A DNA stretch of 64,000 nt. Origin: Narcine bancroftii. Its lineage: Eukaryota. A program made the position numbers and the translations under genes. The stretch lies in contig NC_091469.1 in assembly GCF_036971445.1 (NCBI RefSeq), positions 157,418,001 to 157,482,000 of the forward strand, in the 5' to 3' direction. Shown piece by piece: positions 3,438 through 63,684 of this stretch (within the stretch, counting starts at the first letter, position 1; each line of letters begins with the position of its first letter). The notes under the pieces were generated by a model that searched no databases, was not told the DNA's origin, and worked only from the letters and a program-made list of their open reading frames with translations.

Positions 3438-3478
3438 TCATTGTTTATTTGAGTTAACAACTGTTGCGTAAATCTCAG
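3438..3478 (-). CDS. Siglec-15-like receptor, terminal coding exon (AEIYATVVNSNKQ*) with distal ITIM-like motif
   Basis: Acceptor ttgttcctgtttcag|CT. A phase-1 join to the previous exon gives A-E-I-Y-A-T-V and a TGA at 3440-3438, followed by unique 3'UTR-like sequence with AATAAA. Confidence 0.75.
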
Positions 3479-4529
3479 CTGAAACAGGAACAACTCCATT
3501 TTAGAATTTCATTCTATGTATAGAGCTGAACTTTTCAGAAACATACTAAACACAAAATGGAACGAGATAGTACAGGAACAAACCTTTTGGCAGGCATTGT
3601 CTGTCCTTGACACAATGCCACTCAAACTAAATCACTTCTGCCCATACGATAAATATCTCTTTCTACAAGTGTCCATCTAGAAGCCGCTTAAACACAATTA
3701 TATCACTGAAGGCACAGGAGAGACTGCAGTAGCTGGAATCAGAAGCTAATCTGGAATCTGGAGTTCATCCAGATATTTTCGTAATCTCAGAAAAATCTTC
3801 TTCATTCTACCATACCATTTGTTGTTTTGTTTTAAACTGTAGATTTAATTACTTTAAGTTCGACTGTCTTCGCTGCTACATCAGGATTTCAACCCACGCG
3901 ATTAATGATCTGAGACTTTGGTGTTAGGAAATGAACCATGGCGTTATTGTACAGCCGATGAGATGCCCTTGGGCCAACCATTCTCAACCTCATTTGAACT
4001 GTGGCCCTTCTAGGACTCTGCTCAACGTTTTTGGCCCCCTCCCCGTAAAGCAGCCAAACTGGTTTCTTCCATGCTTCTCTCCCCTGACATCATTAAAAAA
4101 AACACATAAAATGTATGTTTAAAGAATTTCTTGCATGTAGCGTTATGACAATAATGGAACATTTACCTTTTTTTATGTGGGGTGGAAAGAAAACAAAAGC
4201 TTTCACTTAAATGTGGTGTGGCCCCTGGAGGGGGTGAGGGGTTGACATAGGGCTGCTCAGGGTCAGTCACTAGAGAGCAACAGCTCACAGGCCGATGTGT
4301 CAGAACCGGGAGAACTGATCAGAGATAGGGTATTAACATACTCACACTCATTGATACGATTTGCAGTCTGATCATTTCAGGGTTTCAGTTCAGGTTAACA
4401 ATGGAGATTACAGACTTTAGCATGTAAACAAACAGGATTTTCCTGCCATAAAAAAACCCACTGGAACTTGATCCTTGCAATTCCCTCCAAATCATGCCCT
4501 GACAGACCACAGGCTATTATTTGGATAGG

Positions 4530-4895
4530 ATAGAAGAATGAGGGAAGATTATGAGGGGGATTTACAGAGTAAATGTGAGTAGGTTTCTTCCACTGAGGAT
4601 AGGTGAGATACAAACCAGAGGGCCTGGGATAATGGTGAAAGGGGGAATGTTTAGGGGGGAACCTCTTCACACAGAGAGTGGTGGGAGTGTGGAAAGATCT
4701 GCCAGCAGAAGCGATGAATGCGGGCTCAATTTTAACATTTAAGAAGAATTTGGACAGGTACATGGATGGAAGAGGTATGGAGGGCTATGGACTGGTTGCA
4801 GAACAGTGGAATTAGACAAAAAAAAATGGTTTGGCACAGACTAGAAGGGCCAAAGGAGCCTGTTTCTGTGCTGTAATGTTCTCTGGTTCTCTATG
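4530..4895 (+). mobile_element. CR1 LINE 3' fragment
   Basis: Decayed FPLR.GE..TRG / FTQRVV motifs and the CR1 3' tail ctgtgctgtaatgttct. Confidence 0.8.
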
Positions 4896-6340
4896 GGGAG
4901 GTCATTCAAAGTTTGGAGGTGCAAAGGGACTTGGGAATCCTCGTGCAGGATATCCAAAAGGTTAATGTCAAGACTGAGTCAGTGGTGGAGAAGGCAAATG
5001 CGATGTTGGTATTCAGATTTCAAATTTTTTGTCAGAGAACATACATGACATCACATACAACCCTGAGATTCCTTTTTCCTGGGGACAAGGCAGAATTTCC
5101 ACTAATTGGTAGTGCAATAAATAAACAGTACGCAGCGTAAACATGTAAATCAGTGGTCTCAAACTTTTTCTTTCCACTCACTCCCACTTTAAGTATTCCC
5201 TATGCCATCGGGGCTCTGTGATTAGTAAGGGATTGCTTAAGGTGGTCTGTGAGTGGGAAGGGAAGGTTGAGAATCACTGCTCTAGACCCAATTGTTACTG
5301 GAATATTTTGCTCGAGAAAAATTGTCATTGTCCCATTTCCTTTGGAGTTATGAAACCGTGCACATAACGAGTCAATGAAGTACGATGAAAACAGTGATTT
5401 TCAAACTTTTTCTTTCCATCCACATACCACCTTAAGCAATCCCTTACTAATCATAGAGCTCTGATGGCATAGGGAATACTTGAAGTATGTAAATGGAAAG
5501 AAAAAGGTTGAGAACCACTGATGTAAACAAATAAAGAACTGTAAACAAATATTGAATGTAAACAAATTGACTGCAAAACAGAGAGAACAAAAATGAAAAT
5601 CAATAAAGTGCACAAGCAAGAGTCGTTAAATAAGTCCCTGATTGAGTTTGACGTTGAGGAGTCTGATGGTGGAGGGGGAGCAGCTGTTCCTGAACCTGGT
5701 GGTGCGAGTCTTGTGGCCCCGAGACCTCTTTCCTGATGGCAGAAGTGCTGGGTGGTTCATATTTAGAGGAATAGTATATAAGAGCAGGGATGTGATGCTG
5801 AGGTTTTGTAAGGTACTGGTAGAACCACACTTGGAATTTTGGGTACAGTTTTGGGCTCCTTATTTAAGGCAGGTTGTGCTGGCATTGGAAATGTTTCAGA
5901 GAAGATTCCTGGAATTAAGGGATTAGCATATGAGGAAAGTTTGACGGCTCTTGAAGTGAATTCCTTGGAGTTCAGAATAATGAGCATTTGGATGTTGAAA
6001 GGCCTGGTAAGAGTAGATGTGACAAAGTAGTTTCCCATGGTAGAGGAGTCTTGGGCAAGAGGGCACAACTTCAGGATTGGAAACAGAGATGCGGAGGGAT
6101 TTCTTTAGCCAGAGAAGGGTGAACCTCTGGAATTTACTGCCACAGGCTGCTGTGGAGGCCAGGCCATTGGGTACATTTAAGGCAGAGATTGGCAGTATCT
6201 GAATAGTCAAGGTATCAAGGGTTATGGGGAGCAGGTAGGGAAGTGAGGCTGAGTGGGAGAATGGATCCTCTCATGTTGGAATGGTGGAGCAGGCTCAAGG
6301 GGTTGAATAGCCTACTTCTGCTCCTGTATTTTGTGGTCTT
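4896..6340 (+). mobile_element. CR1 LINE 3' fragment, interrupted by a Rex/L2-like 3' end (about 5013-5745, minus strand) that contains a MITE
   Basis: VQRDLGILV..KANAML resumes as ..RGIVYKSRDVMLR..PHLEFWVQFW after the insert. Confidence 0.75.
5151..5520. mobile_element. hAT-type composite MITE (two ~129-bp TIR-bounded units plus a spacer)
   Basis: Ends CAGTGGTCTCAAAC...GGTTGAGAACCACTG; 8-bp TSD ATGTAAAT/ATGTAAAC. Confidence 0.85.
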
Positions 6341-7229
6341 GTGAAGGTCACTCCAGGTGCTGTGCTCTCCAGAGTTCCAGACTCAGTGGGAAACCCGATG
6401 CATGTGGTAGCATGGATAACTGTTCTGTGTGCTGTGGTGTAAGTAACCTCTGTGATCAGTGCTACCTTTACATCAGGGAACACAAACTCCCAAGGGAATC
6501 GTGTTATTCCTTCAGTGGCCTTGCCATTGGCGATCATGTCTCTCTGTCCATCACGATCTCTGACCCTCCGAATTGTAGTTGTTGCCTCCCCTGTTCTCCT
6601 TCGGTGAAGGCTCCGTCTTTGAGCTGAGACTGTAGTCGATGTTGAGGTCATGATTATACAAGGGGTAGAATAATGAAGTGGTTTCCCATTGCCTTCTTCA
6701 GTTGCAGGGTCCACACTGGACGGGTAATCCTGGCCATTGATCAGTAGATTCATCTGCCCAGTGTTTTTAGTTGTACAACCATAAATTCCAATTTGTAGAA
6801 TCTGCTTGTAAAAACCATCCACCACCTGCAACCCATAGCTTCACGTGACCCTGACTGGGAGGCTAAACAGGTAACTACACCTTGCCCAAGGGTGACCTGT
6901 ACCTATCAGAGAAAAGGAGATTGCAGAACACTAACACCGACGGAATCCATGTAGATGCTGGAATTTCCTGTTCACTGCCACCCAAATTCCTTACCTGTCT
7001 CTTCCTTGGCTCTGGGGGCACTTTGGACATTGCTGTAGAGGGACAAACCTGGAGACTTCTGTGGATCTGGAAATCACAGAGATACTTATTGAAACCCCCT
7101 CATCCTCTCCCCACTTCATTCTTTCATTAAAACAACCATCTCCACAACTCTGACAGCCCCGCACCTTCCTGTCCTGATAACCCCATCCACCCTCTCCTGC
7201 CCTTTTTGCCCTTCTTCCCTCGCGATCCA

Positions 7230-7330: not shown

Positions 7331-8389
7331 CGGGCTGCACTCGACCCCAGACTTACATTTTTAACATCCTTCTTCCCTTATTCTCCAAAATCTGGGAGAA
7401 CCTGAACTCCAATTGGAGTCTGCCTCTTCTCCCTGTAGCCGCTTTCCTCTGGGTTCTCCACATCCCAAAGAAAAGCGGGTTGGTAGGTCAATTGGTAAGT
7501 ATGTCCCTTAAATTGTAATGTCCTGCCCCAAAAGGCAGTTGGTTGCTCCTCTTCTCTCTGCATGCCCCTCTCCCCACCCAAATGCCCCTTTCATCTGCTT
7601 GTCACACTCAAATCTTTTGGCCGGCATTGTCTGTGCCTTGAGTGCACGTTCACTGCTCTTAATCTGACAGCAACTTTGTCCCCTCTACCAAAATTCACAC
7701 CTCACACTTACCCATAGAGTCTCTTTCTCCTACTCTAGCCCATTTGCATTTCCTGCTTCTTGCCTGCCTTGTGGGAAGCAGAAGACGACACCCCTGTGTT
7801 GAGATGTAATTACACCACTAGGAGACCAGGAGTCATCCACCGCGATGACCTTGTATATGAAGCAGTCCAGAGATACAATCTAGCTTTCCAGGTTCGTCTT
7901 GCAGAGAGACAAGACCTCTTAGTGTACATATTAGTTTATTAAAGCTGTCTTATACTCACACTGCTGGTGTGGTTATTGGCAGTATAACCAGCAAGGTCTT
8001 TGGGCCTGTCACACCTTGGGCCTTGCCGCTGCTTCCACCATGAGGGGCTTTACCCACACCCTCCCTCTCAAAGTCAGGATGTCAGACACCAAGCCCACCA
8101 AGCAGGGCTAGGTGGGATCCCCGGTGTGTGCTCTCAGCCCAAATGCCTGCTCCCTGACCTACCAGCTGGGAACAGGAATTCCCAGATGGTGTTCACACCA
8201 CTGCTGGTGTTGGGCTGCACAACCTGATGGCTCCACTCTTTACCTGTTTTTGCTTCCACTTCAGAACGTCTTCGAATGTGAACAGTGCTGTAAATAACAG
8301 CATCTGAAGAATCTGGAAAGGACACAGATTTACTGCCTTAGCTCCAAAATCCCACTTTTTAGTTCTTTTTTTGTTACATTTTTGGTGGT

Positions 8390-13260: not shown

Positions 13261-16200
13261 AAACATAGAAACATAAACATAGAAGATAGGAGCAGGAGTA
13301 GGTCATTCGGCCCTTCGAGCCTGCTCCACCATTCAGTGAGATCATGGCTGACAATAGACAATAGACAATAGACAATAGGAGCTGGAGTAGGCCCTTCGGC
13401 CCTTCGAGCCAGCACCGCCATTTTCCAGATCATGGCTGATCACTACCATCAGTACCCCTTTCCAGCCTTATCCCCATAACCCTTAACTCCTTTGCCCACT
13501 AGAGTCTTATCTAACTCTCTTTTGAACATAATCAGCGAATCTGCCTCTACCACCCTCTGTGGCAGAGCATTCCACAGATTCACACTTCTCTGGGTCAAAA
13601 AATGTTTTCTCATCTCCGTCGTAAAGGGCCTACCCTGTATTCTTAAACTATGCCCTCTAGTCCTCGTCTCCCCCATCATTGGGAACAAGTATTCCGACTT
13701 CATCCTGTCTATCCCCCTGATGATTTTGTATACCTCAATCATGTCCCCCCTCATCCTTCTAAACTCCATCAGATACAAGTCCAGTTTTTCTAGCCTTTCA
13801 GCATATGTCAACCCCGCCATCCCTGGAACTAACCTTGTAAATCTGCGCTGCACACCCTCTATAGCTAGTATGTCCTTCCTCAAAATTGGAGACCAGAACT
13901 GGACGCAATACTCCAGGTGGGGTCTCACCAGGGCCCTGTACAACTGCAGAAGGGCGTCTCTGTTCCTACACTCCAATCCCCTCTTTATGAAAGCCAACAT
14001 GCCATTTGCCTTCTTCACAGCTTTCTGAACCTGCATGCTAGTCTTCAGTGACCGGTAAACAAGTACTCCCAGTTCAATTTGCTCCTCCCCACTCTCTAGC
14101 TTGTCTCCATTTAAATAATACTCAGCTTTCCTATTATTGCCCCCAAAATGGATAACCTCACATTTGCTTACATTGAACGTCATCTTCCATTCAGCAGCCC
14201 ACTCCCCCAACCTGTCCAAGTCCCTCTGCATTTTCCTGACATCCTCCTCACACCCCACACCGCCACCCAGTTTCGTGTCATCTGCAAATTTGCTCAAGTT
14301 ATTAATAATCCCCTCATCCAAATCATTTACATAAATTACAAACAACTGAGGACCCAATACCGATCCCTGCGGCACTCCACTCGTCACATTCTGCCATCCT
14401 GAAAAAGACCCGCTTACCCCAACCCTTTGTTTCCTATTTCTTAACCAATTTCCTATCCATGTCAGCACCTTACCTCCAATACCATGCTCCCTGATCTTGC
14501 CCACTAGTCTCCCGTGCGGTACCTTATCAAAGGCCTTCTGGAAGTCCAAATACACCACATCCACTGGCTCTCCCGAGTCCACCCTCTTTGTCACATCCTC
14601 AAAAAATTCCAGAAGGTTAGTCAAGCATGACTTACCCTTAAGGAATCCATGCTGACTAGCCCTTATACTATTATTTCTGCCTAAGTGTTCTGCTATTACT
14701 CCTTTTATGATGGACTCCAATATCTTCCCCACCACCGACGTCAGGCTGACCGGTCTATAATTTCCCGTTTTCTCCCTCCCTCCCTTCTTAAAAATCGGCA
14801 CCACATCAGCCACTCTCCAATCCTCAGGGACCTCCCCCGAATCTATGGACTTTGGAAAATGTCGACCAGTGCCTCCACAATTTCCATAGCAACTTCTTTA
14901 AGCACCCTGGGATGCAGCCCATCAGGCCCTGGGGTTTTATCAGCCCTCAGTCCCAACAATTTACTCACAACCTCCTGCTTCTAGATCTGGATATCCATTA
15001 GATCCCCTACTTCCCCAGGAAAGTTCCCCAAGTCTCTTGATACCGCATGACCACTACCCCCTAACTGACCATAACCTATATCCTCCTTGGTGAAGACAGT
15101 TGCAAAGTATTTGTTAAATTCTTCAGCCATCTCCTTGTTTCCGGTAATAATTTCACCCTTTTCCATTCATAATGGACCAATTTTAGACTGAACCAATTTC
15201 TTCCTCTTCACATATTTAAAAAAGCTTTTGCTATCCTCCATTATATTATTTGCTAATTTCCTCTCGTACTTCATTTTCCCCTCTCTTATGACTTTCTTAG
15301 TTACCCTCTGATGTTCTTTGAAGGTTTCCCAATCCTCTAACTTCCCACTCCACTTTGCTATCTTATACTTACTCCCTTTGGATTTGATATTACACTTGAT
15401 TTCATTAGTTAGCCACGACTGCCATTTGCATCTCCTCGAGCCTTTCCTCCACTTTGGAATAAATTTGTCCTGAAACCTGTGAAAAATGTCCAAAAATACC
15501 TGCCATTTTTCCCCAGTTGTCCTCCCAGCTAGAGTATCTTTCCATTTTATTTTGGCTAGCTCCTCCCTCATAGCTGCATAATCCCCTTTATTTAACTGCA
15601 GCACAGATGCTTCCAACTTCCTTTCTTTTTCCCTTTCTAATTGCAGCTCAAAAGTAACCATACCATGGTTCCCCTACATCGAGGTCACTTATTAACTCTG
15701 CATCACTGCACAGCACCAAGTCGAGAATCGACTTCCCCCTGGTAGGTTCCTCCACCAGCTGCTCCAAGAAAGTATCTCGTAGACATTCAATAAACTCAGT
15801 CTCTTCTGCTCCTGCCCCCGTCTGATTATCCCAGTCCACCTTCATGTTAAAGTCCCCCATAACTACTGTATTGCTACCACTTTGACATGCCACTCTTAAT
15901 TCCTGATTTATACTTCTACTGATATCTAAGCTACTTTTCGGAGGCCTGTAAATGACCCCCATTATGGTCCTCATGCCTTTACAATTTCTTAATTCTATCC
16001 AAACAGTCTCTACCCCACCTGTTTCAATGTCTTTCCTTTCAAACGCCTGAATTTCATTTCTTACCAACAGAGCTACCCCACCTCCTCTTCCTAACTTTCT
16101 GTCTTTTCTATAGGACGTGTACCCTGGAACATTTATTTCCCAATCTTGCCCTTCCCGCAGCCATGACTCCGTTACTCCGACAATATCATAACCTCCCATT

Positions 16201-18918
16201 GCCATTTGTGCCTCAAGCTCATCCATTTTATTCCTTACACTCCGTGCATTCATACACAATACCTTGATACCATATCTCCTTTCTCCCTCCACCTTTGTTC
16301 TCGATGCACTTGCCCCTACTCTCCTATTCTTTTTAGTTCCATTTTTCCTTATTGTATAACGGAAACGCCCCTATATTCACTCTCCTATCTGCTTCCCTAT
16401 CAGTCCTGTTCCCTTCCCCATGCCAAATTAGTTTAAATCAAATCTGACAGCATTTTTAAACCTAACTGCCAGTATATTGGCCCCCATTGCATTCAGGTGT
16501 AAACCATCCCTCCTGTAGAGGCCTTGTCTTCCCCAGAAGAGATCCCAATGGTCAATGAACCTGAATACCTGCACTCTGCACCATTCCTCCAGCCACATTC
16601 CTCCCGCCTTCTCTCCATAACCCCTAATTCCCTTATACTGAAGAAATATATCTAATTCCTCTTAAATATATTAAATGAACCTGCCTCTACTGTTCTCTGT
16701 GGCAATGAATTCCACAGATTTACCCTCTGGGTAAAGAAATTCCTCCTCATCTCGGTTCTAAATGGTTTGCCTATTACCCTCGAACCATGGCCCCGGGTTT
16801 TGGACTCCCCTAACATTGGAGACATCCCTTCCGCATCCATTCTGTCCAGTCCTGCCAGAATTTTATATGTCTCTATGAGATCCCCTCTCAATCTTCTAAA
16901 CTCCAGCGAGTACAATCCCAAATTGTGCAATCTTTCCTCCTAAGTCATTTCTGCCATTCCAGGTATCAGCCTGGTGAATCGCCTCTGCACTCCCTCCATT
17001 GCAAGAACATCCTTCCTTAGATAAGGTGACCAAAACTGCACACAATACTCCAGGTGGGGTCTCACCAAGGCCCTGTACAGCTGCAGTAAGGTATCCTTGT
17101 TCCTATACTCAAACCCTCTTGATATGAAGGCCAACCTACCATTTGCCTTTTTAACCACCTGCTGTACCTGCATGCTCGCCTTCAGAGACTGGTGTACAAG
17201 TACCCCTAGGTCTCTCTGCACTTCCCCATCTCTTAATCCATTGCCATTCAAATAGTAATCTGTCCTCCGGATTGTATTACCAAAGTGGATAACCTCACAT
17301 TGATCCACATTGTAGTGCATTTGCCATGTATCTCCCCAGACCCCCAATTTATCCAAATCACACTGGAGCTTCCTGACCCCCTCTTCCGTGCACACAACCC
17401 CTCCCAGTTAAGTGTCGTCTGCAAATTTGGAGATATTCCATCCAATCCCCTCATCCAGATCATTAATGTAAATTGTGAACAGCTGGGGTCCCAGTACAGA
17501 TCCCTGTGGCACCCCACTGGTCACCGCCTGCCACTCAGAAAACGAGCCGTTTATCCCAACTCTCTGTCTTCTACCTGCCAGCCAGTTCTCAATCCACATC
17601 AATACTTTGCCCCCAATCCCATGAGCCTTGATTTTGGAAGCCAGTCGTTTATGCGGACCTTATCGAAGGCCTTTTGGAAGTCCAGATACACCACATCCAC
17701 TGGCTCTCCCCCATCTATTTTACCTGTCACCATCTCAAAGAATTCCAATAGATTTGTCAAGCACAATTTACCTTTTGTAAATCCATGTTGACTCCATTCG
17801 ATCCCTTCTCTGCTCGTCATATGCTCTGCTATTACATCCTTAATAATGGATTCCATCATTTTGCCCACTACTGATGTAAGGCTCACCGGCCGATAATTCC
17901 CCGCTTTTTCTCTACCCCCTTTTTAAATAATGGGGTAACATTAGCTACCCTCCAATCCATGGGTAATGATCCTGAGTCTATCCAGTTCTGGAAAATAATT
18001 CTTAAAGCATCTGCTATCTGAATGGCCACTTCCTTGAGTACCCTAGGATGTAGATTATCAGGCCCTTGGGATTTATCTGCCTTCAATCCCATCAATTTCC
18101 CCAAGACCATGTCCTTAGAGATACTGATTTCTTTCAGTTCCTCCCTTCCATTAGTCTCTATGTTTCCCAACATCCTTGGGAGGTTATTTGTATCCTCTCT
18201 TGTAAAAACTGAACTAAAGTAAGAATTTAATTGGTCTGCCATTTCCTTATTCCCCATTATATATTCCCCTGATTCCGACTGCAAGGGACCTACTCTGGAT
18301 TTCACCAATCTTTTCCTCTTGACATATTTATAAAAGCTTTTGCAGTCGGTTTTTATATTTGCCGCAAGCTTACTTTCGTAATTTATTTTTGCTCTCTTGA
18401 TTAATCCCTTTGTCCTCCTTTGCTACATCTTGAACTGTTCCCAGTCTTCGGTTGTGGTACTTTTTTTGGCCAATTGATATGCTCTCTCTTTGGACCTAAT
18501 GCTGTCTCTAATTTCCCTTGTTATCCACGGTTGAGTCACCTTTTTTCGTTTATTTTTATGCCAAACTGGTATAAACGATTTCTGCAATTTTTCCATTAGA
18601 TCTGTGAATGCTTTCCATTGTCTATCCACAGTCAACTCCCCCATAAACATCACCCAATCCATCTTACTCAACTCCCATCTCATACCATCATAATTCCCTT
18701 TATTTAAATTCAGGACCTTAGTCTCGGTTTTAATTTCATCACTCTCCATGTCGAGTGAGAATTCGATCATTTTGTGATCGCTCCTACCCAAAGGGCCTTG
18801 TACAACAAGATTGCTGATTAGCCCCTTATCATTGCATAATACCCAGTCTAAAATGGCCTGCTCCCGAGTTGGTTCCTCGACATATTGGTCTAGATAACCG
18901 TCCCGTAAACATTCAAGG
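13261..18918 (-). mobile_element. CR1 LINE (5'-truncated), whose 3'UTR is interrupted by another CR1
   Basis: Tail (AAACATAG)n at 13261; ORF2 fragments at 16652-18791 ([26 protein letters not shown]). Confidence 0.88.
13351..16596 (-). mobile_element. Young CR1 LINE: ORF1 esterase end plus nearly complete ORF2
   Basis: Tail (CAATAGA)n; APE-type ORF 15648-16292 (CMNARS, VTESWL, YRPP, GDFN); 454-aa open RT ORF 13449-14813; SGNH-like DGLHLN motif near 16490-16520. Confidence 0.92.
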
Positions 18919-21150
18919 AATGGGAGGGCATTGAGGAATGCAGTGGAGCAGAAAGATCTAGGAATAACGGTTCATCGTTCCCTGAAGGTAGAATCTCATG
19001 TGAAGAAGGGTTTTGGTATGTTGACCTTTATAAATCAATGCATAGAATACAGGAGTTGGGAGGTAATGTTAAGACTGTTCAAGGCATTGGTGAGGCCAAA
19101 TTTAGATACTGTGTGCAGTCTGGTCACCGAATTATAGGAAGGATATCAACAAGGTAGAGAGAGTGCAGAGAAGATTTGTGTAAATGTTACCTGGGTTTCA
19201 GAATCTAGATTATAAAGAAAGATTGAGAAGATTAGGTCTTTATTATTTGGACTGTAGAAGGTTGAGAGGGGATTTGATAGAGGTATTTAAGATTATGAGG
19301 GAAATAGATAGAGTTGATGTGGATTGGCTTTTTCCCTTGAAGGTAGGAGAGATTGAAACAAGAGGTCATGAGTTAAGAGTTAAGGGGTAAAAGTTTAGAA
19401 GTAACATAATGGGAAACTTCTTCACTCAGAGAGTGGTGGCTGAGTGGAATGAGCTTCCGGGAGAAATAATGGGGGAAGGGGAAGGGGAAGGGTCCATTTT
19501 GTCATTTAAGGAAAAAGAGGTTAGGATGGGAGGGGAATGGAGGGTTATGGGCACGGTGCAGGTAGGTGGAAGTAGAGGAGAGGACTTGGTTCGGTGCAGA
19601 CTAGAAGGGCCGAGATGTCCTGTTTCTGTGCTGTAATCGTTATATGGTTATATAATAGAAGGCATAAATGGGGTACGTGTACATGGATGACAAGATCCTC
19701 TGGGAATGGACATAACAACACAACAAGAGGTTCATCAAAGTGCTACAACGCATCCAGATGTATGGATTAAAGTTAAACAGAGAAAAGTGTCAGTTTGGTG
19801 TGAAGGAAATCACCTTTCTGGGAGATAAACTGTCAGAAGCAGGTGTGGAGCCTGACAAGAGCAAGGTGAAAGCCATTTTAGAGATGCCCAGACCCACTGA
19901 CAAAAAAGACATATTGGGAGTGCTGGGAATTGGTGTATTACCACACATTGGTAAATTCATACCAAACCCCTCTTCCAAAGCAATGTACCTAAGGAAGATG
20001 ATACAGGACAAATGTGAATTCAAGTGGACAGACAACTGCGACGAAGAATGGGGACAACTGAAGGCCACTCTAACTACAGAACTAGTACTTTTGACTTTCT
20101 TTGATGCATCCAGAAGGACAAAAATATCCACGAATGCTTCAAAAGATGGAATAGGTGCCATACTCCAGGCTGTGGGAGAAGATTGGAGGCCAGTAGCAGA
20201 TGCATCAAGGACGATGACAACATTTGGATGTCGATATGCACAGATCGAGAAAGAGAGTCTTGGTCTGATCTATGGACTCGATAAATTCCACAGTTATGTG
20301 TATGGTCAACCAACATTCATGGCAGAAATAATCAAGAGAAATCTCAGTGAAATGTCGCTACAAATCCAAAGATTGATGATGAAGCTACAGAGTTATGACT
20401 GAATTGGTGTACACACCGGGGAAACTTATTGTGTTAGCTGATGCGTTATCCAGGGAAATGATGCAGAGTGAAGCACACATTGAGAGTTCCACAGAGACGG
20501 ATGTGAATCTCCACATGAACCTGATCACTGAATCTCTTCCCGAATCTGCCATAAAATCCAAGCAGATCTCAGCTGAAACAGAAAAGGGCACAGTTCTACA
20601 GAATTAAAACTCAAAAATCTGTAGACACTGTGGTTGAAGTAAAAACACAAAATGTTGCAGAAACTCAGCAGGTCAAACAATGTCCTTTATGTAGCAAAAG
20701 TAAAAATACATAACTGTGGCCTTCTCTACATCAGGGAGACACGTCACAGATTGGGCAATCACTTGCTCAGCACCTCTACTACGTCTGCCACAGCAGAGAC
20801 CTCCCAGTAGCCAACAATTTCATTTCTGAATCACTATCCCACACTCATATGTCTGTCCGTGGCCTTGTGTACTACCCCACCCTGACCACCCGCAGAATGG
20901 AAGAACAACACCTTATTTTCCATCTGGGCACCCTCCAGCCAGATGACATTAACAGTGACTTCTCTGCATCCTGCTAAACTTGCTTTTCTTTTATTTCCCT
21001 TCCCCTTTCCAATCCTCCCCTTGCTTTCCCCTCCACCCTCCCAGCCATCCCTCCTCCCCCCTGATTGCTACTCTCCCCTCCCTCCCTTCTCCACCTATCA
21101 TCTCCTGCCTTTGCCATTTCCACCCCACCCCCTAACCTTTTTGTTCAAAT

Positions 21151-23148: not shown

Positions 23149-23782
23149 GGATGCCTGCCAACACTCTTTCATACCTTGATGTCAAGTCCCAAACGTTGGT
23201 TCTGTATCTTTACCTTTGCTACATAAAGGACCCTGTTTAACCTGCTGAGTTTCTCCAGCATTTTGTGTTTTTACAGTTCTACAGAAGGTCATCAAGAATC
23301 TAAATGCAGGATGGCCTGAAGGTGAATGTCATCAGAGCTGAGCTGAGTATTGTCAATGAGCTTCTACTCAGACGGAGCAGAATTATCATTCCCCAATCAC
23401 TGTGACAAGAGATGTTGAAAAGGGTGCACGAAAAATGCAAGAGGAGGGCCAGAACTGCTGTTTATTGGCCAAGGATAAATGCTGACCTTGGCAGGATGGT
23501 TTCAATCTGATTGAAACATCACACAAAGCAGGCAAAGGAACCCATTACCTACCAGCAGAACCAAGGCAGAAAGTTGGGACTGATCTGTTCCACATGGGTG
23601 GAAAAAATGACTTGTTGGTTATTCACTATCTATCGAACTATCCAGAGAGGAGGAGTCACGTGAGGGAGTAGTGGCCGGTCAGGGAATTCCAGCCCTCTCC
23701 CGAAAAGTTTAAAAAAAACACACAAAGCACAATGGTTCAAGATTGAAATTTATAATAAAGTAAAAATAAAGGTGAGAAGAAA

Positions 23783-24999: not shown

Positions 25000-25484
25000 T
25001 GAGAGTAAAAATGACCATGAACTATATGTATGTGTGTATATATATAGTGTGTATACATGAATGTATCCGTATTTAGAGGAAAATATATAGAGTATAGACA
25101 AGAATTAATAAGGGAGGGAAAGGGAATAGAGGGAATAAGGAGGGAATTAAAAGAGTGACCTTTGTTACATATGAAAATTGAAATCTATTCTGGGGGGGGC
25201 TGGGTGGGGAGGAGTTATGGTCACTGCAAAATCAGTTGACATTTGCGAGTGAATTCGCAAATCCAAATGGAGAGGGGAGATGTGGTTGCCCGACAAGGGA
25301 TAAAGGGCAACTCAGGAGGGGGAGGGGAGAATGGGGTTAAAGAAGTTTTAATTAGGAGAATAAGGAAAATGTTTGGTGTTTTAGAAATGTTGTCTTATAA
25401 AGTGTTCAAAACAAGAAAGCAGAAATGGATAAGAAGGAAAGGTGATGATGGAGAAACGGAAAGGAAAGATAAACAAAGTATGAA

Positions 25485-35634: not shown

Positions 35635-35706
35635 CTGGCTCCGCTCCTTCTGATTTCAGATCATTTGCCACATTGGGATCAACAGAGCTTTGACCCTTAT
35701 GGGAAT
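35635..35706 (-). CDS. Siglec-15-like receptor, short cytoplasmic exon (DSHKGQSSVDPNVANDLKSEGAEP)
   Basis: Acceptor ttttatttgacag|AT, donor CCAG|gtaatg, 72 nt, phase 1/1, frame-compatible with both neighbours, non-repetitive sequence. Confidence 0.75.
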
Positions 35707-44989: not shown

Positions 44990-45352
44990 CTTTTTTCACA
45001 AAGCAGAGAGCAAAACCAGCCAAAAGCAGGATAACAGCTGCACTGGATATTCCAATAGAGAGAGCCAGCTTGAATGCATTAATTCCCCCCGTGGGTGAGA
45101 GGAACTCGCGGCTGTCTCTCCCATATTGGTTCTTGGCCACACAGTGGTAGCTCCCTGTCAGGCTGGGTTGAAGCAGCTCTACCGTGATTTGATCTCTCTC
45201 TGGACCTCGTCTGACTCTCGTCCCGCTGCTGTTCATGGCCAGCGTGTTGTTCCCAGGGCTGATCCACGTGATGTCTACAGGAGGCACCCCTTCAGCTGTG
45301 CACGAGAGTGTGTCTCCAGCCACAATTCGCAGCTGCAGGATGGCCGCTGGGA
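44990..45352 (-). CDS. Siglec-15-like receptor, exon encoding C2-set Ig domain plus transmembrane helix
   Basis: Acceptor tttcctctccaag|TC, donor AAAG|gtgagt, phase 1/1. Contains LSCTAEGVPPVDITW..GSYHCVAKNQYG, then hydrophobic LALSIGISSAAVILLLAGFALCFV and a KK stop-transfer. Confidence 0.92.
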
Positions 45353-45804: not shown

Positions 45805-46170
45805 CCACAACCTCCAGCTTTATTTCATCCTGAATCACTAGTTTCGGTCCTTCATTCCAGATCCAAATGTGACTGAAGTAGAAGCTGGTGTCGTTCAGTC
45901 TGAGGTCCGTCACCCTGATGGAGGCGTTTCCTTGCTCTGGCCTTCCCACCAGCTCGTATTGACCTCCTTTATTTACAGTGACATTGCAGGGAAGGGCCGC
46001 AGAGAAGGAACAGGTGCAATTAAAGACAGTAAACTCTTCCTGTAGATTCCCCTTCGTCCAGACGATAATGATGGAGCTGCCATTCTTTCTCTTGGGTTTG
46101 TAAGTCAATGGCAGCAATATGGCAGAACCACCCCTTTTCCCAATCACTGGTGAGGCTCCGGTGCCAGGAT
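45805..46170 (-). CDS. Siglec-15-like receptor, exon encoding atypical V-set Ig domain 2
   Basis: Acceptor ttctccttccaag|AT, donor GTGG|gtaagg, phase 1/1, 366 nt, open. V-set pattern GGSAILLPLTY..IVW..GQYELVGRPEQGNASIRVTDLRLNDTSFYFS; the canonical Cys pair is absent. Confidence 0.85.
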
Positions 46171-52963: not shown

Positions 52964-55692
52964 TCAAGGACTGTAGCGGTCAGGGGGTCTGACCATCCGG
53001 CGTGACCGCCGTGGTGCCGGGATTGGGGTCGCTGGAGTGGTGTCGCCAGTGGGCTCGTCGGGTGCGACTGCTCCGTCGCTCAATTCCCCAGTCGTGTTGT
53101 CGGCAGGGTGGCCCGGGTCATTGGGGTGCTGTTGGTCTTTCTGTTGCGGCACGGGGCCTGGAGAATAAGGAGTTGGGGGGTTTGCTGGGTCTACCGCGTC
53201 CTGAGCTAGGTCCCGCACCGAAACAGTGTCCTCCCGCCCGTCTGGGAACTCAACGTAGGCGTAATGTGGGTTTGCGTGGAGTAGAGTCACTCGGTCGACC
53301 AAGGGGTCGTTCTTTGAGTGCCGGACGTTGCGTCGCAAAAGGACGGGGCCAGGGACGGTGAGCCATGCCGGTACAGTGGTTCCTGATTCGGATTTCCTCG
53401 GGAAAAGGAACATCCTTTCGTGGGGGGTGGCATTTCTTGCAGTACATAGGAGGGAGCGGATGGAGTGTAAAGCACTAGTGAGAACCTCCTGCCAGTGAGA
53501 GGTGGGGAGACCTTTAGACCGGAGAGCCAGTGTAACCGCTCTCCATATGGTGGCATTCTCCCTCTCGACCTGGCCGTTACCGCGTGGGTTATAGCTGGTG
53601 GTCCTGCTTGAAGCAATACCACACTCCAGAAGGTACTGTTGCAGCTCTGCACTCATGAATGAGGACCCCCTATCACTGTGGATGGAATTGGGGTACCCGA
53701 AGATTGTGAAAATACTGTGAAGGGCCTGTATCACTGAGGTGGCAGTGGTGTCTGGGCAGGCCACAGCGAATGGGAAGAGGGAGTACTCGTCGATGGCCGT
53801 AAGGATGTAGGTATTACGGTTGGTCGACGGTAGGGGCCCCTTAAAGTCTACGCTAAGATGCTCGAAGGGGCGGGTGCCTTTGATAACGTGGGATTCAGCG
53901 CACACCGAACAGGCTCGGGTCATGGAGCGGATCTCCTCGACTGTGTAGGGTAAGTTGCGCGCCTTGACAAAGTGAGCAAACCTAGTGACCCCTGGATGAC
54001 AGAGCGCCTCATGGAGTTTCCGTAGTCTGTCCATCTGTATGCTGGCGCACGTCCCCCTGGAGAGCGCGTCAGGCGGGTCGTTGAGCTTACCAGGCCGGTA
54101 CAGGATGTCATAGTTAAAGGTGGAGAGTTCGATTCTCCATCTGGCGATTTTGTCGTTTTTTATCTTACCACGCTGGGTGTTGCTGAACATGAAGGAGACC
54201 GCGCGTTGATCAGTCAACAGTGTAAAGCGCCTCCCAGCAAGGTAATGTCTCCAACGACACACTGCTTCAACTATGGCCTGGGCCTCCTTCTTGATCGAGG
54301 AGTGTCTACTCTCCGGACCCTGGAAGGTTCTGGAGAAGAAGGCTACAGCCCGACCGGCCTGGTTCAAGGTGGCTGCCAGGGCGAAGTCGGATGCATCGCT
54401 CTCGACTTGTAATGGGACAGACTCATCAATCGCGTGCAGCGTCGCAGCAGCGATGTCAGATTTGATTCGATCGAAAGCCGCTGTGGCTTCGGTCGAGAGG
54501 GGAAAAGAGGTGGTCTTGATAAGAGGACGCGCCTTGTCGGTGTAGTGTGGAACCCATTGGGCGTAATACGAGAAAAGGCCCAGGCAACGTTTGAGTCCAT
54601 TAGGGGACGCATGCGGTCAGGATCTGGCATGACTATCCCGTTCTCCACCACACAACCTAGAATAGCGAGTCATGTGGTCCGGAAGATACACTTGTCCAAA
54701 TTGTAAGTCAGGTTTAGCTGACGGGCAGTTTGAAGAAATTTGTCTAGGTTGGCGTCGTGGTCCTGCACGTCATGGCCTCAGATGGTGATATTGTCAAGAT
54801 ACGGGAAGGTAGCGGTTAGCCCGTTCTGGTCCACCATCCTGTCCATTTCCCGCTGGAAGACTGCGACATCATTCGTGACCCCGAATGGTACCCTGAGAAA
54901 TTAATATAGCCGCCCATTCGCTTCAAAGGCCGTGAATGGTCGGTCCTCGCAGCGGATCGGAAACTGGTGGTAGGCCGAACGTAGGTCAATAGTGGAGAAA
55001 ATGCGGTATTGGGCGATCTGGTTCACCACATCCGTGATGCGTGGCAGGGGGTACGCATCCAGGAGCGTGAAGCGGTTAATGGTCTGGCTATACTCGACCA
55101 CCATCCGTAGTTTTTCCCCATTCTTGACAACCACCACCTGGGCTCTCCAGGGGCTTGAACTGGGTTCGATGATGCCCTCATCCAGCAATCTACGCACCTC
55201 ACTCCTAATGAATTGCCTGTTTTCGTAACTATATTGCCGACTTTTGGTGACCACAGGCTTCCAGCCAGGGGTGAGGTTTGCGAAGAGTGCTGGCGGGGCA
55301 ATCCGGAGTGTGGAAAGGCCGCAGGATTGGCCCCGGGGCATGGGGGCAGGTTGCTCGGGTGCTTCGGGAGTGGGGCGATGGCAGACCGAGAGGGGGGCGT
55401 GGGGTCCCCCAAAGTGGAGGGACACCATTTGGAACTGACACTGGAAGTCTAATCCCAGCAACACTGGGGCGCACAATTGGGGAAGGACGAATAATTTGAA
55501 GTGGGTGACCGTCACGCCCTGTACTTCCAGCGTGGCGATGCAATACCCCTTTATCCCAGTCGAGTGCGACCTCGTAGTGGGGATAATGTCAAGTCCCCAA
55601 CGGAGGGCCAGATCTGGCTGGATAAAACTGTCAGTTGACCCAGAGTCAAATAAGCAATTGGTGTAGTGTCCATACACTTTAATCAGTTCCAT
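52964..55692 (-). pseudogene. Gypsy pol (PR-RT-RNaseH-IN), broken by stops and frameshifts
   Basis: LFDSGS, YPLP, DLRSAYHQ, LLTDQ, DALSR, DFKGP, HSDRG and GNGQVER across ORFs 54901-55692, 54364-54651 and 52964-54367. Confidence 0.9.
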
Positions 55693-55743
55693 TGCTCTGG
55701 TGAGGGGATGAGAGCATTGCTGGTTTAGTGTTATTGAAGCAGT

Positions 55744-57054
55744 TTACAGGGGAGTTTTGCGCGATGACGTCACGCACTGAGATGACGTCACGCAACGGGA
55801 TGACGTCACGTAACGGGATGCCGTAGTCAACGCTTGAGGAGCAGGTTGGAGGACCTCCCGGAAGTGCTGTTGTGGCGGCGTTGGCGGGTGAATGGTAAGT
55901 AGTGGGGTTTGTAGTTGCTCGCGATTGGCGGTGGGTAGGTCGTTGATCGCGGCGGTCGGGCCCTGGCGGTCGTCAGCGATGGACGCTAGGGTGAGCATCT
56001 GGTTGGCCGCGGGGTTGGCTGTGGCGGCGGCAGCAGCGGCGGTAGCGTCGGCCCCGGGAGTGGCTGTGGCGGCGGCAGCAGCGGCGGTAGTGTCGAGTGT
56101 TCCGCATGGGGGCGAGAGGCGGGCCATCACCATGGTTGCGAGGGTGGGTTGCCCCTTCCGGGTTTGGCGTCTCCGTGACGTCAGGCGTTGCCGTGCAGGG
56201 GAGCCCTCGCTCTCATTGGACGAGAGCTCTGGGGAAGAAGAGTTTGAATGGGATAGTGGCGATTGGGCTTCACACGAGGCACTGTGTTTGCCGGCGGCCA
56301 TTTTAGACCTGCAGACTGCAGCAAAGTGGCCTTTTTTAAGGCACTTCTGGCACTTGGCTTTTCTTGCTGGGCACTGGGACCTGCTGTGCTTGTCCCTCCC
56401 GCAGAAATAACATTTTGGGTTCGCACGGGTCAGTGTAGCAGCAGCCAACAGGCCGTCAGTATCTCGGGGGGTGGTAGGGTAGAAGGGCACTCTATTCACA
56501 TCAGAACGTGGGTTCCAGTCCCTCGAGAACTCAGTGGACTTTAAGGCTGCATCCTCCATTGTGATTGCAATCCGGGCCACGTCCTCTAGTTTTTCTACCC
56601 CTTGCTCGAGCAAGAGCAGCCTCACTTCGTTCGATCGGAGCCCGGCCACATAGGCATCCCGGACGAGATCGTTTGTGATCTCGGCAGCAGTTTTGTCCAC
56701 ACAGTTACAGTCCTTGCCCAATGCCTTTAATACTTGTAAATATGCCCTGCTGGACTCGCTGGGCTGTTGCTTCCTCGAAGCAAGCACGAGCCGGGCATTA
56801 ACTCTGTTCACCGGTTGATTATACAGTCCTTTCAGTACCTTTATGGCTGCGGTGTAAGTGGTCTCATCCTGGATGTTCTCGTAGACTCTCAAGGACACCA
56901 TAGACAGCAATGCTGTTAGACGCTGGTTATCCTCCTCTACCTGAATGAATCTCAGGAAGTTTTCAAAGTTCAGCAGCCAGAAGTTAAAGGCTTTGAAGGC
57001 TGTAGCTGACTGTGGGTCGATATCAAGTTTTTCTGACCGAGTCAAACGCTCCAT
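55744..57054 (-). CDS. Gypsy gag (two CCHC zinc knuckles, Ala-rich C-terminus)
   Basis: MERLTRSEKLDIDP..; CYFCGRDKHSRSQC and CQKCLKKGHFAAVC; ATG at 57054 just after the LTR. Confidence 0.85.
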   Translation of the reverse strand: MERLTRSEKLDIDPQSATAFKAFNFWLLNFENFLRFIQVEEDNQRLTALLSMVSLRVYENIQDETTYTAAIKVLKGLYNQPVNRVNARLVLASRKQQPSESSRAYLQVLKALGKDCNCVDKTAAEITNDLVRDAYVAGLRSNEVRLLLLEQGVEKLEDVARIAITMEDAALKSTEFSRDWNPRSDVNRVPFYPTTPRDTDGLLAAATLTRANPKCYFCGRDKHSRSQCPARKAKCQKCLKKGHFAAVCRSKMAAGKHSASCEAQSPLSHSNSSSPELSSNESEGSPARQRLTSRRRQTRKGQPTLATMVMARLSPPCGTLDTTAAAAAATATPGADATAAAAAATANPAANQMLTLASIADDRQGPTAAINDLPTANREQLQTPLLTIHPPTPPQQHFREVLQPAPQALTTASRYVTSSRCVTSSQCVTSSRKTPL

Positions 57055-57729
57055 CCCTTCCAAAAAAAATTCTTTTGCTAATAAAATTGTAGAGCTCGTC
57101 GAAAGAATCAAACACTTGTTGATCCAAACCAAGGCTTTTATTAGCAAAAGACAAGAGCTCTTCACAGGTGGCCGACCAGTCTGGAATGATCCAACCTGGC
57201 TAGGGACACAACTCTTTACGGTCCAGACAGTAGGTGTGGCTTAGCTCTCAGCCAATCGCTGCAAGCACAGTCTAGATACAGTAACTATATACACTATGTA
57301 CATTGGTGATAGATCTGTACGATCACAATGCCCACTTTCAAGGAGCTAAAAATCAGGACCCCCCGTTCCTTCTGCACATCAATGTTTATAAGAATCCTGT
57401 CGTTGTACTTTCCCCTGACCTTTAACCTTCCAAAGAGCTGCATCTTACTCTTGCCCCGATTAAATTCCGTCTGTCTTTAACGGATCTATTTTAGAATTCT
57501 TTGATAGCTCTCTGCACTGCTCACAAGTTCACATTTTGTGTCATCTGCAAACTTTCCTAATCCACCTACCTCCTTCTTAATCCAATCATTTCTCTACATT
57601 ACCAACAATAGGCGTCTACTGAACGTTTACATTTTGTTTCACAGATGGGACTCAGTTCTCACCTTCTATTCTTCTCTGATGTACACAGGCATGGACAAAT
57701 CTCCTGCGTCTGCTTGGATATACCCGATG

Positions 57730-61690: not shown

Positions 61691-61699
61691 CCCCAAACC

Positions 61700-62960: not shown

Positions 62961-62968
62961 ACAACCAC

Positions 62969-63215
62969 TGCTAGTGACACGGAGATCCCAGGAAGCAGGA
63001 AGGAAGACACTGCGGTAAACCACTGCTGTATGTATTTGTCTGGTCAGGCACACCCATTGGCCCCTCCCACAGGCATCTGTATAAAGGTGACTGTTCCACG
63101 CCCCCCCCCCCCTCAGTGCAGGACAGTCGAGCTGTGTGGATATGACTTTGTTTTTTTAGTGAATAAAAACCTTTGGTTTCTCAACCTCAGTCTTTGAGTA
63201 ATTGATGGTGCCTCA
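62969..63215 (+). mobile_element. Probable solo LTR related to element A
   Basis: TATAAAGG..AATAAAA..ctcagtctttgagtaattgatggtgcctCA resembles the LTR end at 40131-40185; 5' boundary uncertain. Confidence 0.6.
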
Positions 63216-63303
63216 AAAACATGAGTGTAATCGTATTACTTTACTACCTAATAGAGCAGTGTTATGCAGTTATAAAAATATTTCAGTCTCTATTACTTTT
63301 TAC

Positions 63304-63684
63304 CTTTTATAATGAGAGTCCCATGTTCCAGTTCAAATTTATCCTTTGGCTTCTCTTTGAGATCGACACGACACTTGATCTTCTTATCTTTGTCCTTCAG
63401 CATCAGCTTTTGAATGAGTATGGAGGCATCGTTCCTCCGTGGGTTCCCTCTTGCTTTGTAGCGACTTTCCTCATTCACCTCGATCTCATTCTTAAACTTA
63501 CTTCCTATTTGATAATTTGTGTAATTGAAAAACTGATGGACATTCGTGTTTTTCCAGGCAATGCTGATGTTGCCACGATAGTCAGGGTGAGGGTGAATGA
63601 ACTTGCAAAATAGAATCAGACGCTTCCCTTCTCGCCCCACCACCTTGTCTGGGGTCTCCATACTCCATCCGTTGCCAGAATGGC
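63304..63684 (-). CDS. Siglec-15-like receptor, exon encoding V-set Ig domain 1 (sialic-acid-binding type)
   Basis: Acceptor tttctttgtcctcaag|GC, donor AAAG|gtaaaa, phase 1/1, 381 nt. The translation WSMETP..LFCKFIHPHPDYRG..W..GNPRRNDASI..IKCRVD..DKFELEHG matches Siglec-15 V-set motifs recalled from memory (WSM, CTFTHPH, GNPRRND, YFCRVE, HG). Confidence 0.9.

What the first reader, a model, noticed from the sequence alone, without database searches (positions are those of the whole stretch)
3438..63684. Siglec-15-like receptor with a V-V-C2 ectodomain and an inhibitory tail, hidden in 60 kb of repeats
Seen: six phase-1 exons splice into one open frame of about 492 aa (V1, V2, C2, TM, then a tail with IIYSTI and EIYATV). 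The only Lys near the TM is at its outer edge (AFKLALSIG...). Established: canonical Siglec-15 is V-C2, has a mid-TM Lys that recruits DAP12, and lacks a tandem ITIM tail. Inference: this is a lineage-specific inhibitory paralog with an extra domain, possibly one half of a paired-receptor family built on the Siglec-15 scaffold rather than the CD33 scaffold.
Basis: partly seen in the sequence, partly recalled or inferred. Interest (0 to 1): 0.85.

Follow-up and report, generated by a model that had tools for sequence, protein, structure and literature searches.

The report
Electric-ray Siglec-15-like inhibitory receptor gene
This is a real, transcribed gene of the electric ray Narcine bancroftii for a Siglec-15-related cell-surface receptor that has two V domains and a tail with three canonical inhibitory (ITIM) tyrosine motifs plus a fourth conserved one. 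It is the likely inhibitory counterpart of the activating Siglec-15-type receptors found across sharks and rays.

Summary
Spliced transcript contigs from four public runs (one study) confirm junctions 63304/46170, 45805/45352 and 44990/35706.

RefSeq isoform X1 (555 aa, "uncharacterized protein", Narcine bancroftii) matches eight window exons exactly. Two of them, 8312-8244 and 7066-6995, were missed, and the signal-peptide exon lies outside the window. The tail therefore carries IIYSTI, VIYSTV and SLYSNV plus a conserved C-terminal EIYATV.

V1 is closest to human Siglec-15 and keeps Cys-Arg (R122), Trp and an aromatic residue at the sialic-acid site. V2 has lost the Arg and both canonical cysteines. 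There is no Lys in the membrane core.

The gene is not lineage-specific. V-V-C2 relatives occur in chimaera, sharks and rays, either with a mid-membrane Lys and no tail or with long Tyr-motif tails. The V1/V2 duplication predates the chimaera-elasmobranch split.

The most likely function is an inhibitory sialoglycan receptor. A Narcine activating partner was not verified here. A second isoform skips the C2+TM exon.

The parts
63304..63684 (-). Exon encoding V1 (P0097 residues 17/18-143/144). It is a Siglec-15-type V-set with Trp23, Cys43, Cys121-Arg122 and Phe at the human Y154 position.
   Evidence: RNA contigs of 4 runs join its 3' end to 46170.
45805..46170 (-). Exon encoding V2, a degenerate Siglec-15-type V-set. 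Leu165 and Ser243 replace the two canonical Cys, and His244 replaces the Arg. Three Cys lie in the C'-C'' region.
   Evidence: Covered without mismatches by contigs of 4 runs. pLDDT is about 71-94.
44990..45352 (-). Exon encoding the I/C2-set domain plus the transmembrane helix (about residues 361-384). Lys360 is at the outer edge, Lys385-386 at the inner edge, and there is no charge in the core. This exon is skipped in isoform X2.
35635..35706 (-). Cytoplasmic exon 4 (DSHKGQSS...AEP).
   Evidence: The loose ends at 44990 and at 45805 read into its first 25-30 bases.
33613..33867 (-). Cytoplasmic exon 5, with ITIM IIYSTI (Tyr422).
8244..8312 (-). The motif and its context are conserved in Leucoraja and Mobula birostris.
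6995..7066 (-).
3438..3478 (-). Coding part of the last exon: the conserved C-terminal motif EIYATV (Tyr546) and the TGA stop at 3440-3438. The 3' UTR continues below 3438, with an AATAAA at 3232-3227.
52964..57165 (-). LTR-type retroelement ORFs (protease, RT, RNase H, integrase) inside the V1-V2 intron. They are intron filler, not part of the gene product.
13449..31334 (.). Several LINE-type ORFs (endonuclease, reverse transcriptase) on both strands inside the 25-kb intron between exons 5 and 6.

Best explanation
The window holds nearly all of a Narcine bancroftii gene for a type I membrane receptor of the Siglec-15 family; only the signal-peptide exon is missing.

Shown:
- Eight phase-1 exons spread over 60 kb of retroelement-filled introns encode V1, V2, C2+TM and a 169-residue disordered tail.
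- The gene is transcribed and spliced.
- One isoform skips the C2+TM exon in frame.

Inferred mechanism:
- The membrane-distal V1 binds sialylated glycans through Arg122, helped by Trp23 and Phe at the human Y154 position.
- V2 is a spacer that no longer binds sialic acid.
- With no charged residue in its membrane core, the receptor does not pair with DAP12.
- After tyrosine phosphorylation, its three ITIMs (Tyr422, 503, 529) and the conserved C-terminal Tyr546 motif recruit SH2 phosphatases (SHP-1/2) and damp activation.
- It is the inhibitory counterpart of the Lys-TM, tail-less V-V-C2 'Siglec-15' receptors of cartilaginous fish.
- The exon-skipped isoform would be secreted and could act as a soluble decoy.
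For: Exon structure, splice sites and phases were read directly. All eight exon translations and all junction codons match RefSeq isoform X1 (P0097) residue for residue.

Spliced contigs from four runs have no depth in the 452-bp intron. Their loose ends match the V1 and exon-4 edges. One contig joins V2 directly to exon 4, which is the structure of RefSeq isoform X2 (P0002).

Family placement:
- phmmer against PDB sequences gives Siglec-15 as the best match for V1 (1.9e-14) and V2 (1.2e-6).
- In 1.84 billion representatives, the named hits beyond cartilaginous fish are Siglec-15 of lungfish, coelacanth, sturgeon, bowfin, frog, turtle, birds and mammals.
- In the domain tree, V1 falls in a chondrichthyan clade (99/95) next to the bony-vertebrate Siglec-15 V clade.

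Ligand site: R143, W44, Y154 and E155 of human Siglec-15 (PMC10264397) align with R, W, F and E in V1.

The four Tyr-motif positions are conserved between Narcine, Heptranchias and Mobula birostris. The AlphaFold model shows three confident Ig domains, a helix at 358-384 and a disordered tail. Lys-TM relatives in 14 species share a near-invariant membrane segment.
Against: - No binding or signalling experiment exists. Sialic-acid binding and SHP recruitment are inferred from motifs.
- Human Y87 is His in V1, and V1 lacks the C95-C104 disulfide that is characteristic of human Siglec-15.
- All four Tyr motifs also fit YxxPhi endocytosis signals.
- EIYATV is not a canonical ITIM or ITSM.
- Junctions exon5/6, 6/7 and 7/8 rest on the RefSeq models and on cross-species conservation, not on reads examined here.
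- No Narcine Lys-TM partner was retrieved.
- The Pristis relative has lost its tail tyrosines, so the tail is not under constraint everywhere.
Confidence: 0.7

Rival explanations
1. It is an endocytic or scavenger-type sialoglycan receptor. The tail tyrosines would act mainly as YxxPhi sorting signals for AP-2, as in CD22 and CD33 internalisation, rather than as phosphatase-recruiting ITIMs.
For: YSTI, YSTV, YSNV and YATV all fit YxxPhi. V1 keeps the sialic-acid Arg.
Against: Three motifs also carry the -2 I/V/S residue that defines an ITIM. Conservation extends to that position in several species. The two roles are not exclusive.
Confidence: 0.15
2. It is simply the Narcine orthologue of canonical activating Siglec-15, with a misread membrane segment or tail.
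For: The best PDB and named database relatives are Siglec-15. NCBI names some relatives Siglec-15.
Against: There is no Lys in the membrane core, and Lys360 is replaced by Thr in the closest relatives. The tail has 169 residues and three ITIMs. Other elasmobranchs have a separate gene with the conserved ...PLIKFLLLLITG... segment and no tail. The sequence is confirmed by RNA contigs without mismatches.
Confidence: 0.04
3. The main product is the secreted isoform that lacks C2+TM. The gene would then act chiefly as a soluble sialoglycan-binding decoy or opsonin, with the 'tail' as a functionless appendage.
For: A contig joining 45805 directly to exon 4 is present in run X2 at depth 8.8, against 12.5 for the inclusion form. 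RefSeq isoform X2 has the same structure.
Against: The inclusion form is seen in all four runs and the skip form in only one. Contig depths do not measure expression. The tail motifs are conserved across species in membrane-bound relatives.
Confidence: 0.08
4. It is a decaying gene copy that is transcribed but no longer functional. V2 has lost its disulfide and the gene is bloated by retroelements.
For: Narcine V2 is the only one of 24 V2 domains lacking both canonical Cys. The Pristis relative shows tail decay.
Against: The frame is intact over eight exons and 555 codons, with canonical splice sites. The Arg, Trp and four Tyr motifs are conserved. V2 is still modelled as an Ig fold with pLDDT about 71-94.
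Confidence: 0.03

Closest known systems
Siglec-15 (human/mouse SIGLEC15, PDB 7ZOZ)
   Same: It is the best sequence relative of V1, V2 and the C2 exon among Siglecs. V1 shares the B-F disulfide with Arg directly after the F-strand Cys (C142-R143 in human), and also W44 and an aromatic residue at 154. Both are type I membrane proteins with a C2 domain next to the membrane.
   Different: Human Siglec-15 is V-C2. It has a mid-membrane Lys that pairs with DAP12/DAP10, a short tail without ITIM, and a C95-C104 disulfide in its V domain. The ray protein is V-V-C2 with no core Lys and three ITIMs plus a fourth Tyr motif. V1 lacks C95/C104, and Cys at similar positions occur in V2 instead.
Elasmobranch and chimaera Lys-TM 'Siglec-15' proteins (e.g. 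Mobula XP_062903801, Leucoraja, Pristis, Cetorhinus, Callorhinchus LOC103174418)
   Same: They have the same V1-V2-C2 ectodomain and fall in the same V1 and V2 clades, at 40-59% identity per domain to the Narcine protein.
   Different: They carry a conserved ...PL[IV]KFLLLLITG... membrane segment with Lys and essentially no tail. In 9 of the 11 Lys-TM V1 domains examined, the sialic-acid Arg is replaced by Leu.
Long-tail relatives: Heptranchias 'Siglec-12 isoform X2/X3', Leucoraja LOC129695366, Mobula birostris XP_072113536, Callorhinchus LOC103188797
   Same: They share a V1 with Cys-Arg, one or more V2 domains, C2, an uncharged TM, and a tail with the same series of IYSxV-type motifs and the C-terminal AxIYAxV motif. 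These are the likely orthologues or co-orthologues.
   Different: The number of V2 (or V1) domains varies from 1 to 3. Narcine alone has lost both V2 cysteines. Narcine has a long insert between the first and second motifs.
Teleost siglec15l (e.g. Conger conger XP_061119044)
   Same: It has a Siglec-15-type V domain with Cys-Arg, an uncharged TM and ITIMs (IIYADI, VCYAEV). It is therefore also an inhibitory-type Siglec-15 relative outside mammals.
   Different: Only a single Siglec-15-type V domain was detected. Its V domain groups with bony-vertebrate Siglec-15, not with the chondrichthyan clade. Common origin of the inhibitory forms is unresolved.
Mammalian paired Siglecs (Siglec-5/Siglec-14)
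   Same: One ITIM receptor and one DAP12-coupled receptor have partly homogenised ectodomains.
   Different: In Siglec-5/14 the ligand-binding N-terminal domains are kept alike (own knowledge). In the ray and sawfish pairs the membrane-proximal V2 and C2 are 74-85% identical while V1 is only 46-48%. The scaffold is Siglec-15, not CD33-related.

Membership tests
Siglec-15 (orthologue of the mammalian gene) | V-set domain with the essential Arg (human R143) directly after the F-strand Cys | tested here: met
   V1 has KCRVD aligned to human FCRVE. V2 has FSHIW, so the feature is not met there. R143's role is taken from PMC7226832 and PMC10264397.
Siglec-15 (orthologue of the mammalian gene) | Other sialic-acid contacts (W44, Y87, Y154, E155) | tested here: inconclusive
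   W, F and E are kept at positions 44, 154 and 155, and His replaces Y87, by the alignment.
Siglec-15 (orthologue of the mammalian gene) | Second disulfide C95-C104 in the V domain | tested here: not met
   V1 has no Cys at these columns. V2 has Cys at matching columns.
Siglec-15 (orthologue of the mammalian gene) | Ectodomain of one V-set plus one C2-set domain | tested here: not met
   Two V-set exons plus one I/C2 exon.
Siglec-15 (orthologue of the mammalian gene) | Lys in the membrane core for DAP12/DAP10 pairing | tested here: not met
   The core, residues 361-384, is uncharged. Lys360 is at the outer edge and is not conserved in relatives.
Siglec-15 (orthologue of the mammalian gene) | Short tail without ITIM | tested here: not met
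   The tail has 169 residues with IIYSTI, VIYSTV and SLYSNV.
Siglec-15 family in the wide sense (homology) | Domains group with Siglec-15 rather than with other Ig families | tested here: met
   The best PDB relative is Siglec-15 for V1 and V2. Named database hits are Siglec-15. The V1 clade lies beside the bony-vertebrate Siglec-15 V clade. No CD33, MAG or CD22 outgroup was included in the tree.
Siglecs (I-type lectins) | Binds sialic acid | not testable with these tools
   This needs a glycan-binding assay.
ITIM-bearing inhibitory receptors | At least one [I/V/L/S]xYxx[I/L/V] motif in the cytoplasmic tail of a receptor with an uncharged TM | tested here: met
   Three motifs, at Tyr422, 503 and 529. 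The consensus is as quoted in PMC7226832, which gives [L/V] at +3. IIYSTI needs the wider definition.
ITIM-bearing inhibitory receptors | Recruits SHP-1/SHP-2/SHIP when phosphorylated | not testable with these tools
Paired activating/inhibitory receptors | A partner gene in the same genome with a similar ectodomain and a charged TM | tested here: inconclusive
   Such partners are present in Callorhinchus, Pristis, Leucoraja and Heptranchias. For Narcine none was retrieved. There is only an unchecked scan note about 514 kb away.

The most novel reading that the evidence does not exclude
Cartilaginous fish carry an old paired-receptor system built on the Siglec-15 scaffold; the activating/inhibitory split itself is traced here to before the shark-ray split. 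The inhibitory, ITIM-tailed member (this gene) keeps the sialic-acid Arg. The DAP12-type Lys-TM member has replaced it by Leu in most sharks and rays. Gene conversion homogenises the membrane-proximal V2-C2 rather than the ligand-binding tip, which is the reverse of mammalian Siglec-5/14. That would mean the 'uniquely conserved activating' Siglec-15 began as one half of a pair whose inhibitory half was lost in mammals.
Probability: 0.4. Interest if true: 0.7.

Novelty: new variant of a known kind. Interest (0 to 1): 0.55.

Why it matters
Siglec-15 is treated in the literature as a conserved, DAP12-coupled V-C2 receptor without an inhibitory counterpart. It is also a drug target in bone disease and cancer.

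This gene and its relatives show three things:
- In the oldest living jawed-vertebrate lineage the scaffold is V-V-C2.
- It comes in both Lys-TM and ITIM-tailed forms.
- The sialic-acid Arg is kept mainly in the inhibitory form.

This gives comparative immunologists a concrete, expressed gene with which to test how activating/inhibitory Siglec pairs arise and what the ancestral role of Siglec-15 was. I found no paper describing these chondrichthyan genes in the library searched. The proteins exist only as automatic annotations, mostly 'uncharacterized'.

Tried and rejected
- **Fold search.** The Foldseek search of the whole 555-aa model against the PDB returned only generic three-Ig chains (titin, IgLON, DIP). 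It gave no family information.
- **Choosing between tail models by contig length.** The 2166-nt contig has 839 nt downstream of the TM exon. Both predicted contig ends, about 3108 and about 2967, fall at low-complexity sequence, so this did not decide the matter.
- **Upstream open frame.** The frame running upstream of V1 (63685-63982) has no signal peptide. It does not match the RefSeq N-terminus, which is not found anywhere in the window.
- **Narcine Lys-TM partner.** The search with the Mobula protein returned only the two isoforms of this gene for Narcine. A blank there proves nothing.
- **Literature.** Searches for chondrichthyan Siglec-15-like or paired Siglec-15 receptors found nothing specific.
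- **Pfam on the tail exon.** Only a chance-level hit.
- **Joined model not searched.** Whole-protein steps used the database proteins P0097 and P0002.
Full report
**Observation**

Each is flanked by AG and GT, and each has a length divisible by three with the codon split 1/2. Translated by reference, they give:
- a V-set domain (63684-63304; Pfam V-set 1.3e-6);
- a second V-set domain (46170-45805; 3.1e-7);
- an I/C2-set domain followed by a hydrophobic span (45352-44990; I-set 1.1e-9);
- three cytoplasmic pieces.

The window has no N.

**Transcription**

Four public runs of one study hold about half of the sampled words of 44900-46250, which is the exon share of that stretch. Laid on it, their contigs cover the two exons with no mismatches and leave the 452-bp intron at zero depth. 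All four show the joint 45352/45805.

The loose ends beyond 46173 are the reverse complement of the last bases of the V1 exon, in four runs. Three bases are shared between the V1 exon end and the intron end, hence 46173 rather than 46170. The loose ends before 44990 are the reverse complement of the first bases of exon 4, in two runs.

V1, V2, C2+TM and exon 4 are therefore on one transcript, so "V1 belongs to a separate gene" is excluded. The runs are small (110-330 million letters) and one contig is 2166 nt at depth 21. This is RNA, not low-coverage genomic DNA.

One contig of run X2 joins 45805 directly to exon 4. It skips the C2+TM exon in frame.

**Corrected gene model**

A HMMER search of the V1 exon against 1.84 billion representatives found a 434-aa protein with identical V1 and V2. 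It is XP_069798446.1, "uncharacterized protein isoform X2" of Narcine bancroftii. A word-based search with that database protein found isoform X1, 555 aa (P0097).

- 8312-8244, encoding DSSDAVIYSTVHIRRRSEVEAKT;
- 7066-6995, encoding DPQKSPGLSLYSNVQSAPRAKEET.

All eight window exons and all seven junction codons reproduce P0097 residues 18-555 exactly. The first 16 codons, the signal peptide, are not in the window and must lie beyond 64000.

Isoform X2 is the exon-skipped form seen in the RNA.

Exons were searched by reference, and whole-protein steps used the database proteins.

**What the domains are**

Among solved structures V1 matches human Siglec-15 at E 1.9e-14, and the next best, CD33, at 5e-4. 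V2 matches Siglec-15 at 1.2e-6, and the next best, TIM-3, at 0.046. The C2 exon is a generic I-set that also matches Siglec-15 through to the membrane.

According to the crystal-structure paper (PMC10264397), human Siglec-15 has these features:
- a C64-C142 disulfide;
- a distinctive C95-C104 disulfide;
- the essential R143;
- contacts from W44, Y87, Y154 and E155.

By the alignment V1 keeps C64, C142, R143 (Arg122 of P0097) and W44. It has an aromatic Phe at 154 and keeps E155. It has His at 87 and lacks C95/C104.

V2 has Leu and Ser in place of the two canonical Cys and His in place of the Arg. It has three Cys at or near the C95/C104 columns. Among 24 chondrichthyan V2 domains, Narcine's is the only one without the canonical pair. 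AlphaFold still models it as an Ig domain with pLDDT about 71-94.

**Membrane span and tail**

The model gives a helix at 358-384 and a disordered tail. Lys360 lies at the outer edge and is Thr in the closest relatives. Lys385-386 are the usual inner stop-transfer residues. The core has no charge.

The tail holds three canonical ITIMs and a C-terminal motif:
- IIYSTI (Tyr422);
- VIYSTV (Tyr503);
- SLYSNV (Tyr529);
- a C-terminal EIYATV (Tyr546).

All four positions align with Tyr motifs in Heptranchias and Mobula birostris. Two align in Leucoraja and Callorhinchus, including flanking residues such as IYS-x-VHI-x-x-RS. That conservation independently supports the two added exons.

**The family**

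Relatives fall into two kinds.

1. *Lys-TM proteins.* These are V1-V2-C2 proteins with a near-invariant membrane segment NFIIGMLCLIPL[IV]KFLLLLITGIILF and no tail. They occur in 13 shark and ray species, and there is a Lys-TM form in Callorhinchus. NCBI mostly names them Siglec-15.
2. *Long-tail proteins.* These are V1-(V2)n-C2 proteins with an uncharged span and long tails with Tyr motifs. Examples are the Narcine gene here, Heptranchias, Leucoraja, Amblyraja, Mobula birostris and Callorhinchus. Pristis and Hemitrygon have degenerate tails.

A maximum-likelihood tree of 57 V domains gives:
- a chondrichthyan V1 clade (99/95);
- a bony-vertebrate Siglec-15 V clade next to it (93/89);
- a separate chondrichthyan V2 clade (99/98) that includes Callorhinchus.

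The V1/V2 duplication therefore predates the chimaera-elasmobranch split. The V-V forms of lungfish and salamander are independent duplications. I left five long or fragmentary models out of the tree (P0001, P0003, P0004, P0006, P0101), and no non-Siglec-15 outgroup was available.

Ray and shark Lys-TM V1 domains form one clade that excludes the ray long-tail V1 domains (97/91). The split between the two V1 types is thus older than the shark-ray divergence. V2 domains group by taxon, not by receptor type.

Identity between the two forms within a species:

| Species | V1 | V2 | C2 |
|---|---|---|---|
| Pristis | 48% | 80% | 85% |
| Leucoraja | 46% | 74% | 75% |
| Callorhinchus | 90% | 96% | 91% |

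This pattern indicates sequence exchange in the membrane-proximal part.

The Arg after the F-strand Cys is kept in four of the five long-tail-type V1 domains examined (Narcine, Pristis, Leucoraja, Heptranchias; Hemitrygon has Gln). It is Leu in 9 of 11 Lys-TM V1 domains.

**How it most likely works**

*Shown:* it is an expressed type I receptor with the anatomy above.

*Inferred:*
- V1 binds sialoglycans.
- V2 acts as a spacer.
- The receptor does not couple to DAP12.
- When phosphorylated, its ITIMs recruit SH2 phosphatases and inhibit activation.
- The skipped isoform is secreted.

I put about 0.7 on this reading. The main alternative is an endocytic role for the same tyrosines, which is not exclusive of it.

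**Comparison and membership**

It is a homologue of Siglec-15. It fails four defining features of the canonical gene: the V-C2 ectodomain, the TM Lys, the ITIM-free tail and the C95-C104 bond in the binding domain. It should be called Siglec-15-like, not Siglec-15. The Lys-TM genes are the better candidates for orthology.

Teleost siglec15l (Conger) is another ITIM-bearing relative. Only a single Siglec-15-type V domain was detected in it, and it sits in the bony-vertebrate clade.

**The pair in Narcine**

No Lys-TM protein of Narcine was retrieved. An unchecked note of this scan reports a [quoted passage not shown] about 514 kb beyond the window end. Further V-V genes are noted about 2.07 Mb away.

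**Novelty**

The gene is automatically annotated but unnamed. I found no paper on chondrichthyan Siglec-15-like receptors or on inhibitory partners of Siglec-15. It is a new variant of a known kind. Its paired-receptor idea is supported in other species and remains open for Narcine.

Noticed in passing
window 45805/35706 (exon 45352-44990 skipped): An in-frame transcript isoform without the C2+TM exon. One contig in run X2 shows it, and it is identical in structure to RefSeq isoform X2 (434 aa). It would be a secreted V1-V2 protein carrying the tail sequence.
   Followed up: partly
window 45805-46170 (V2 exon): Narcine V2 is the only one of 24 chondrichthyan V2 domains that has lost both canonical Ig cysteines (Leu165, Ser243). 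It is also the only one with three Cys in the C'-C'' region, at columns matching the C95-C104 bond of human Siglec-15. The sequence is confirmed by RNA contigs.
   Followed up: partly
proteins P0009, P0102-P0111 (other species): In 9 of 11 Lys-TM 'Siglec-15' proteins of sharks and rays the essential sialic-acid Arg of V1 is Leu (C-L-V). Most long-tail forms keep C-R-V. Within-species pairs are alike in V2 and C2 but not in V1.
   Followed up: partly
protein P0100 (Pristis pectinata): In the sawfish long-tail relative the first ITIM position reads IHNVV (Tyr replaced by His) and the tail ends soon after. The inhibitory tail seems to have decayed in that species.
   Followed up: no
window 35737-35931: Three copies of a 64-bp tandem unit lie directly upstream of exon 4. 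The unit contains GGTTCGAATCC, which resembles a tRNA T-arm, so it is possibly a tRNA-derived SINE fragment.
   Followed up: no
window 52964-57165 (-), 13449-16292 (-), 24382-31334 (+), 19740-20402 (+): The introns are filled with retroelement ORFs. There is one LTR-type element (protease, RT, RNase H, integrase) in the V1-V2 intron, and several LINE-type endonuclease/RT ORFs in the intron between exons 5 and 6.
   Followed up: partly
window 63685-63982 (-): The open frame continues 100 codons upstream of the V1 acceptor but encodes no signal peptide. The true first exon (MLCILLCAVALGVSAK) is not in the window.
   Followed up: yes
same chromosome, about 514 kb and about 2.07 Mb beyond the window end: Scan notes report further Siglec-15-like V-V genes there, one described as activating and lacking the Arg. 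Together with this gene they suggest a cluster.
   Followed up: no
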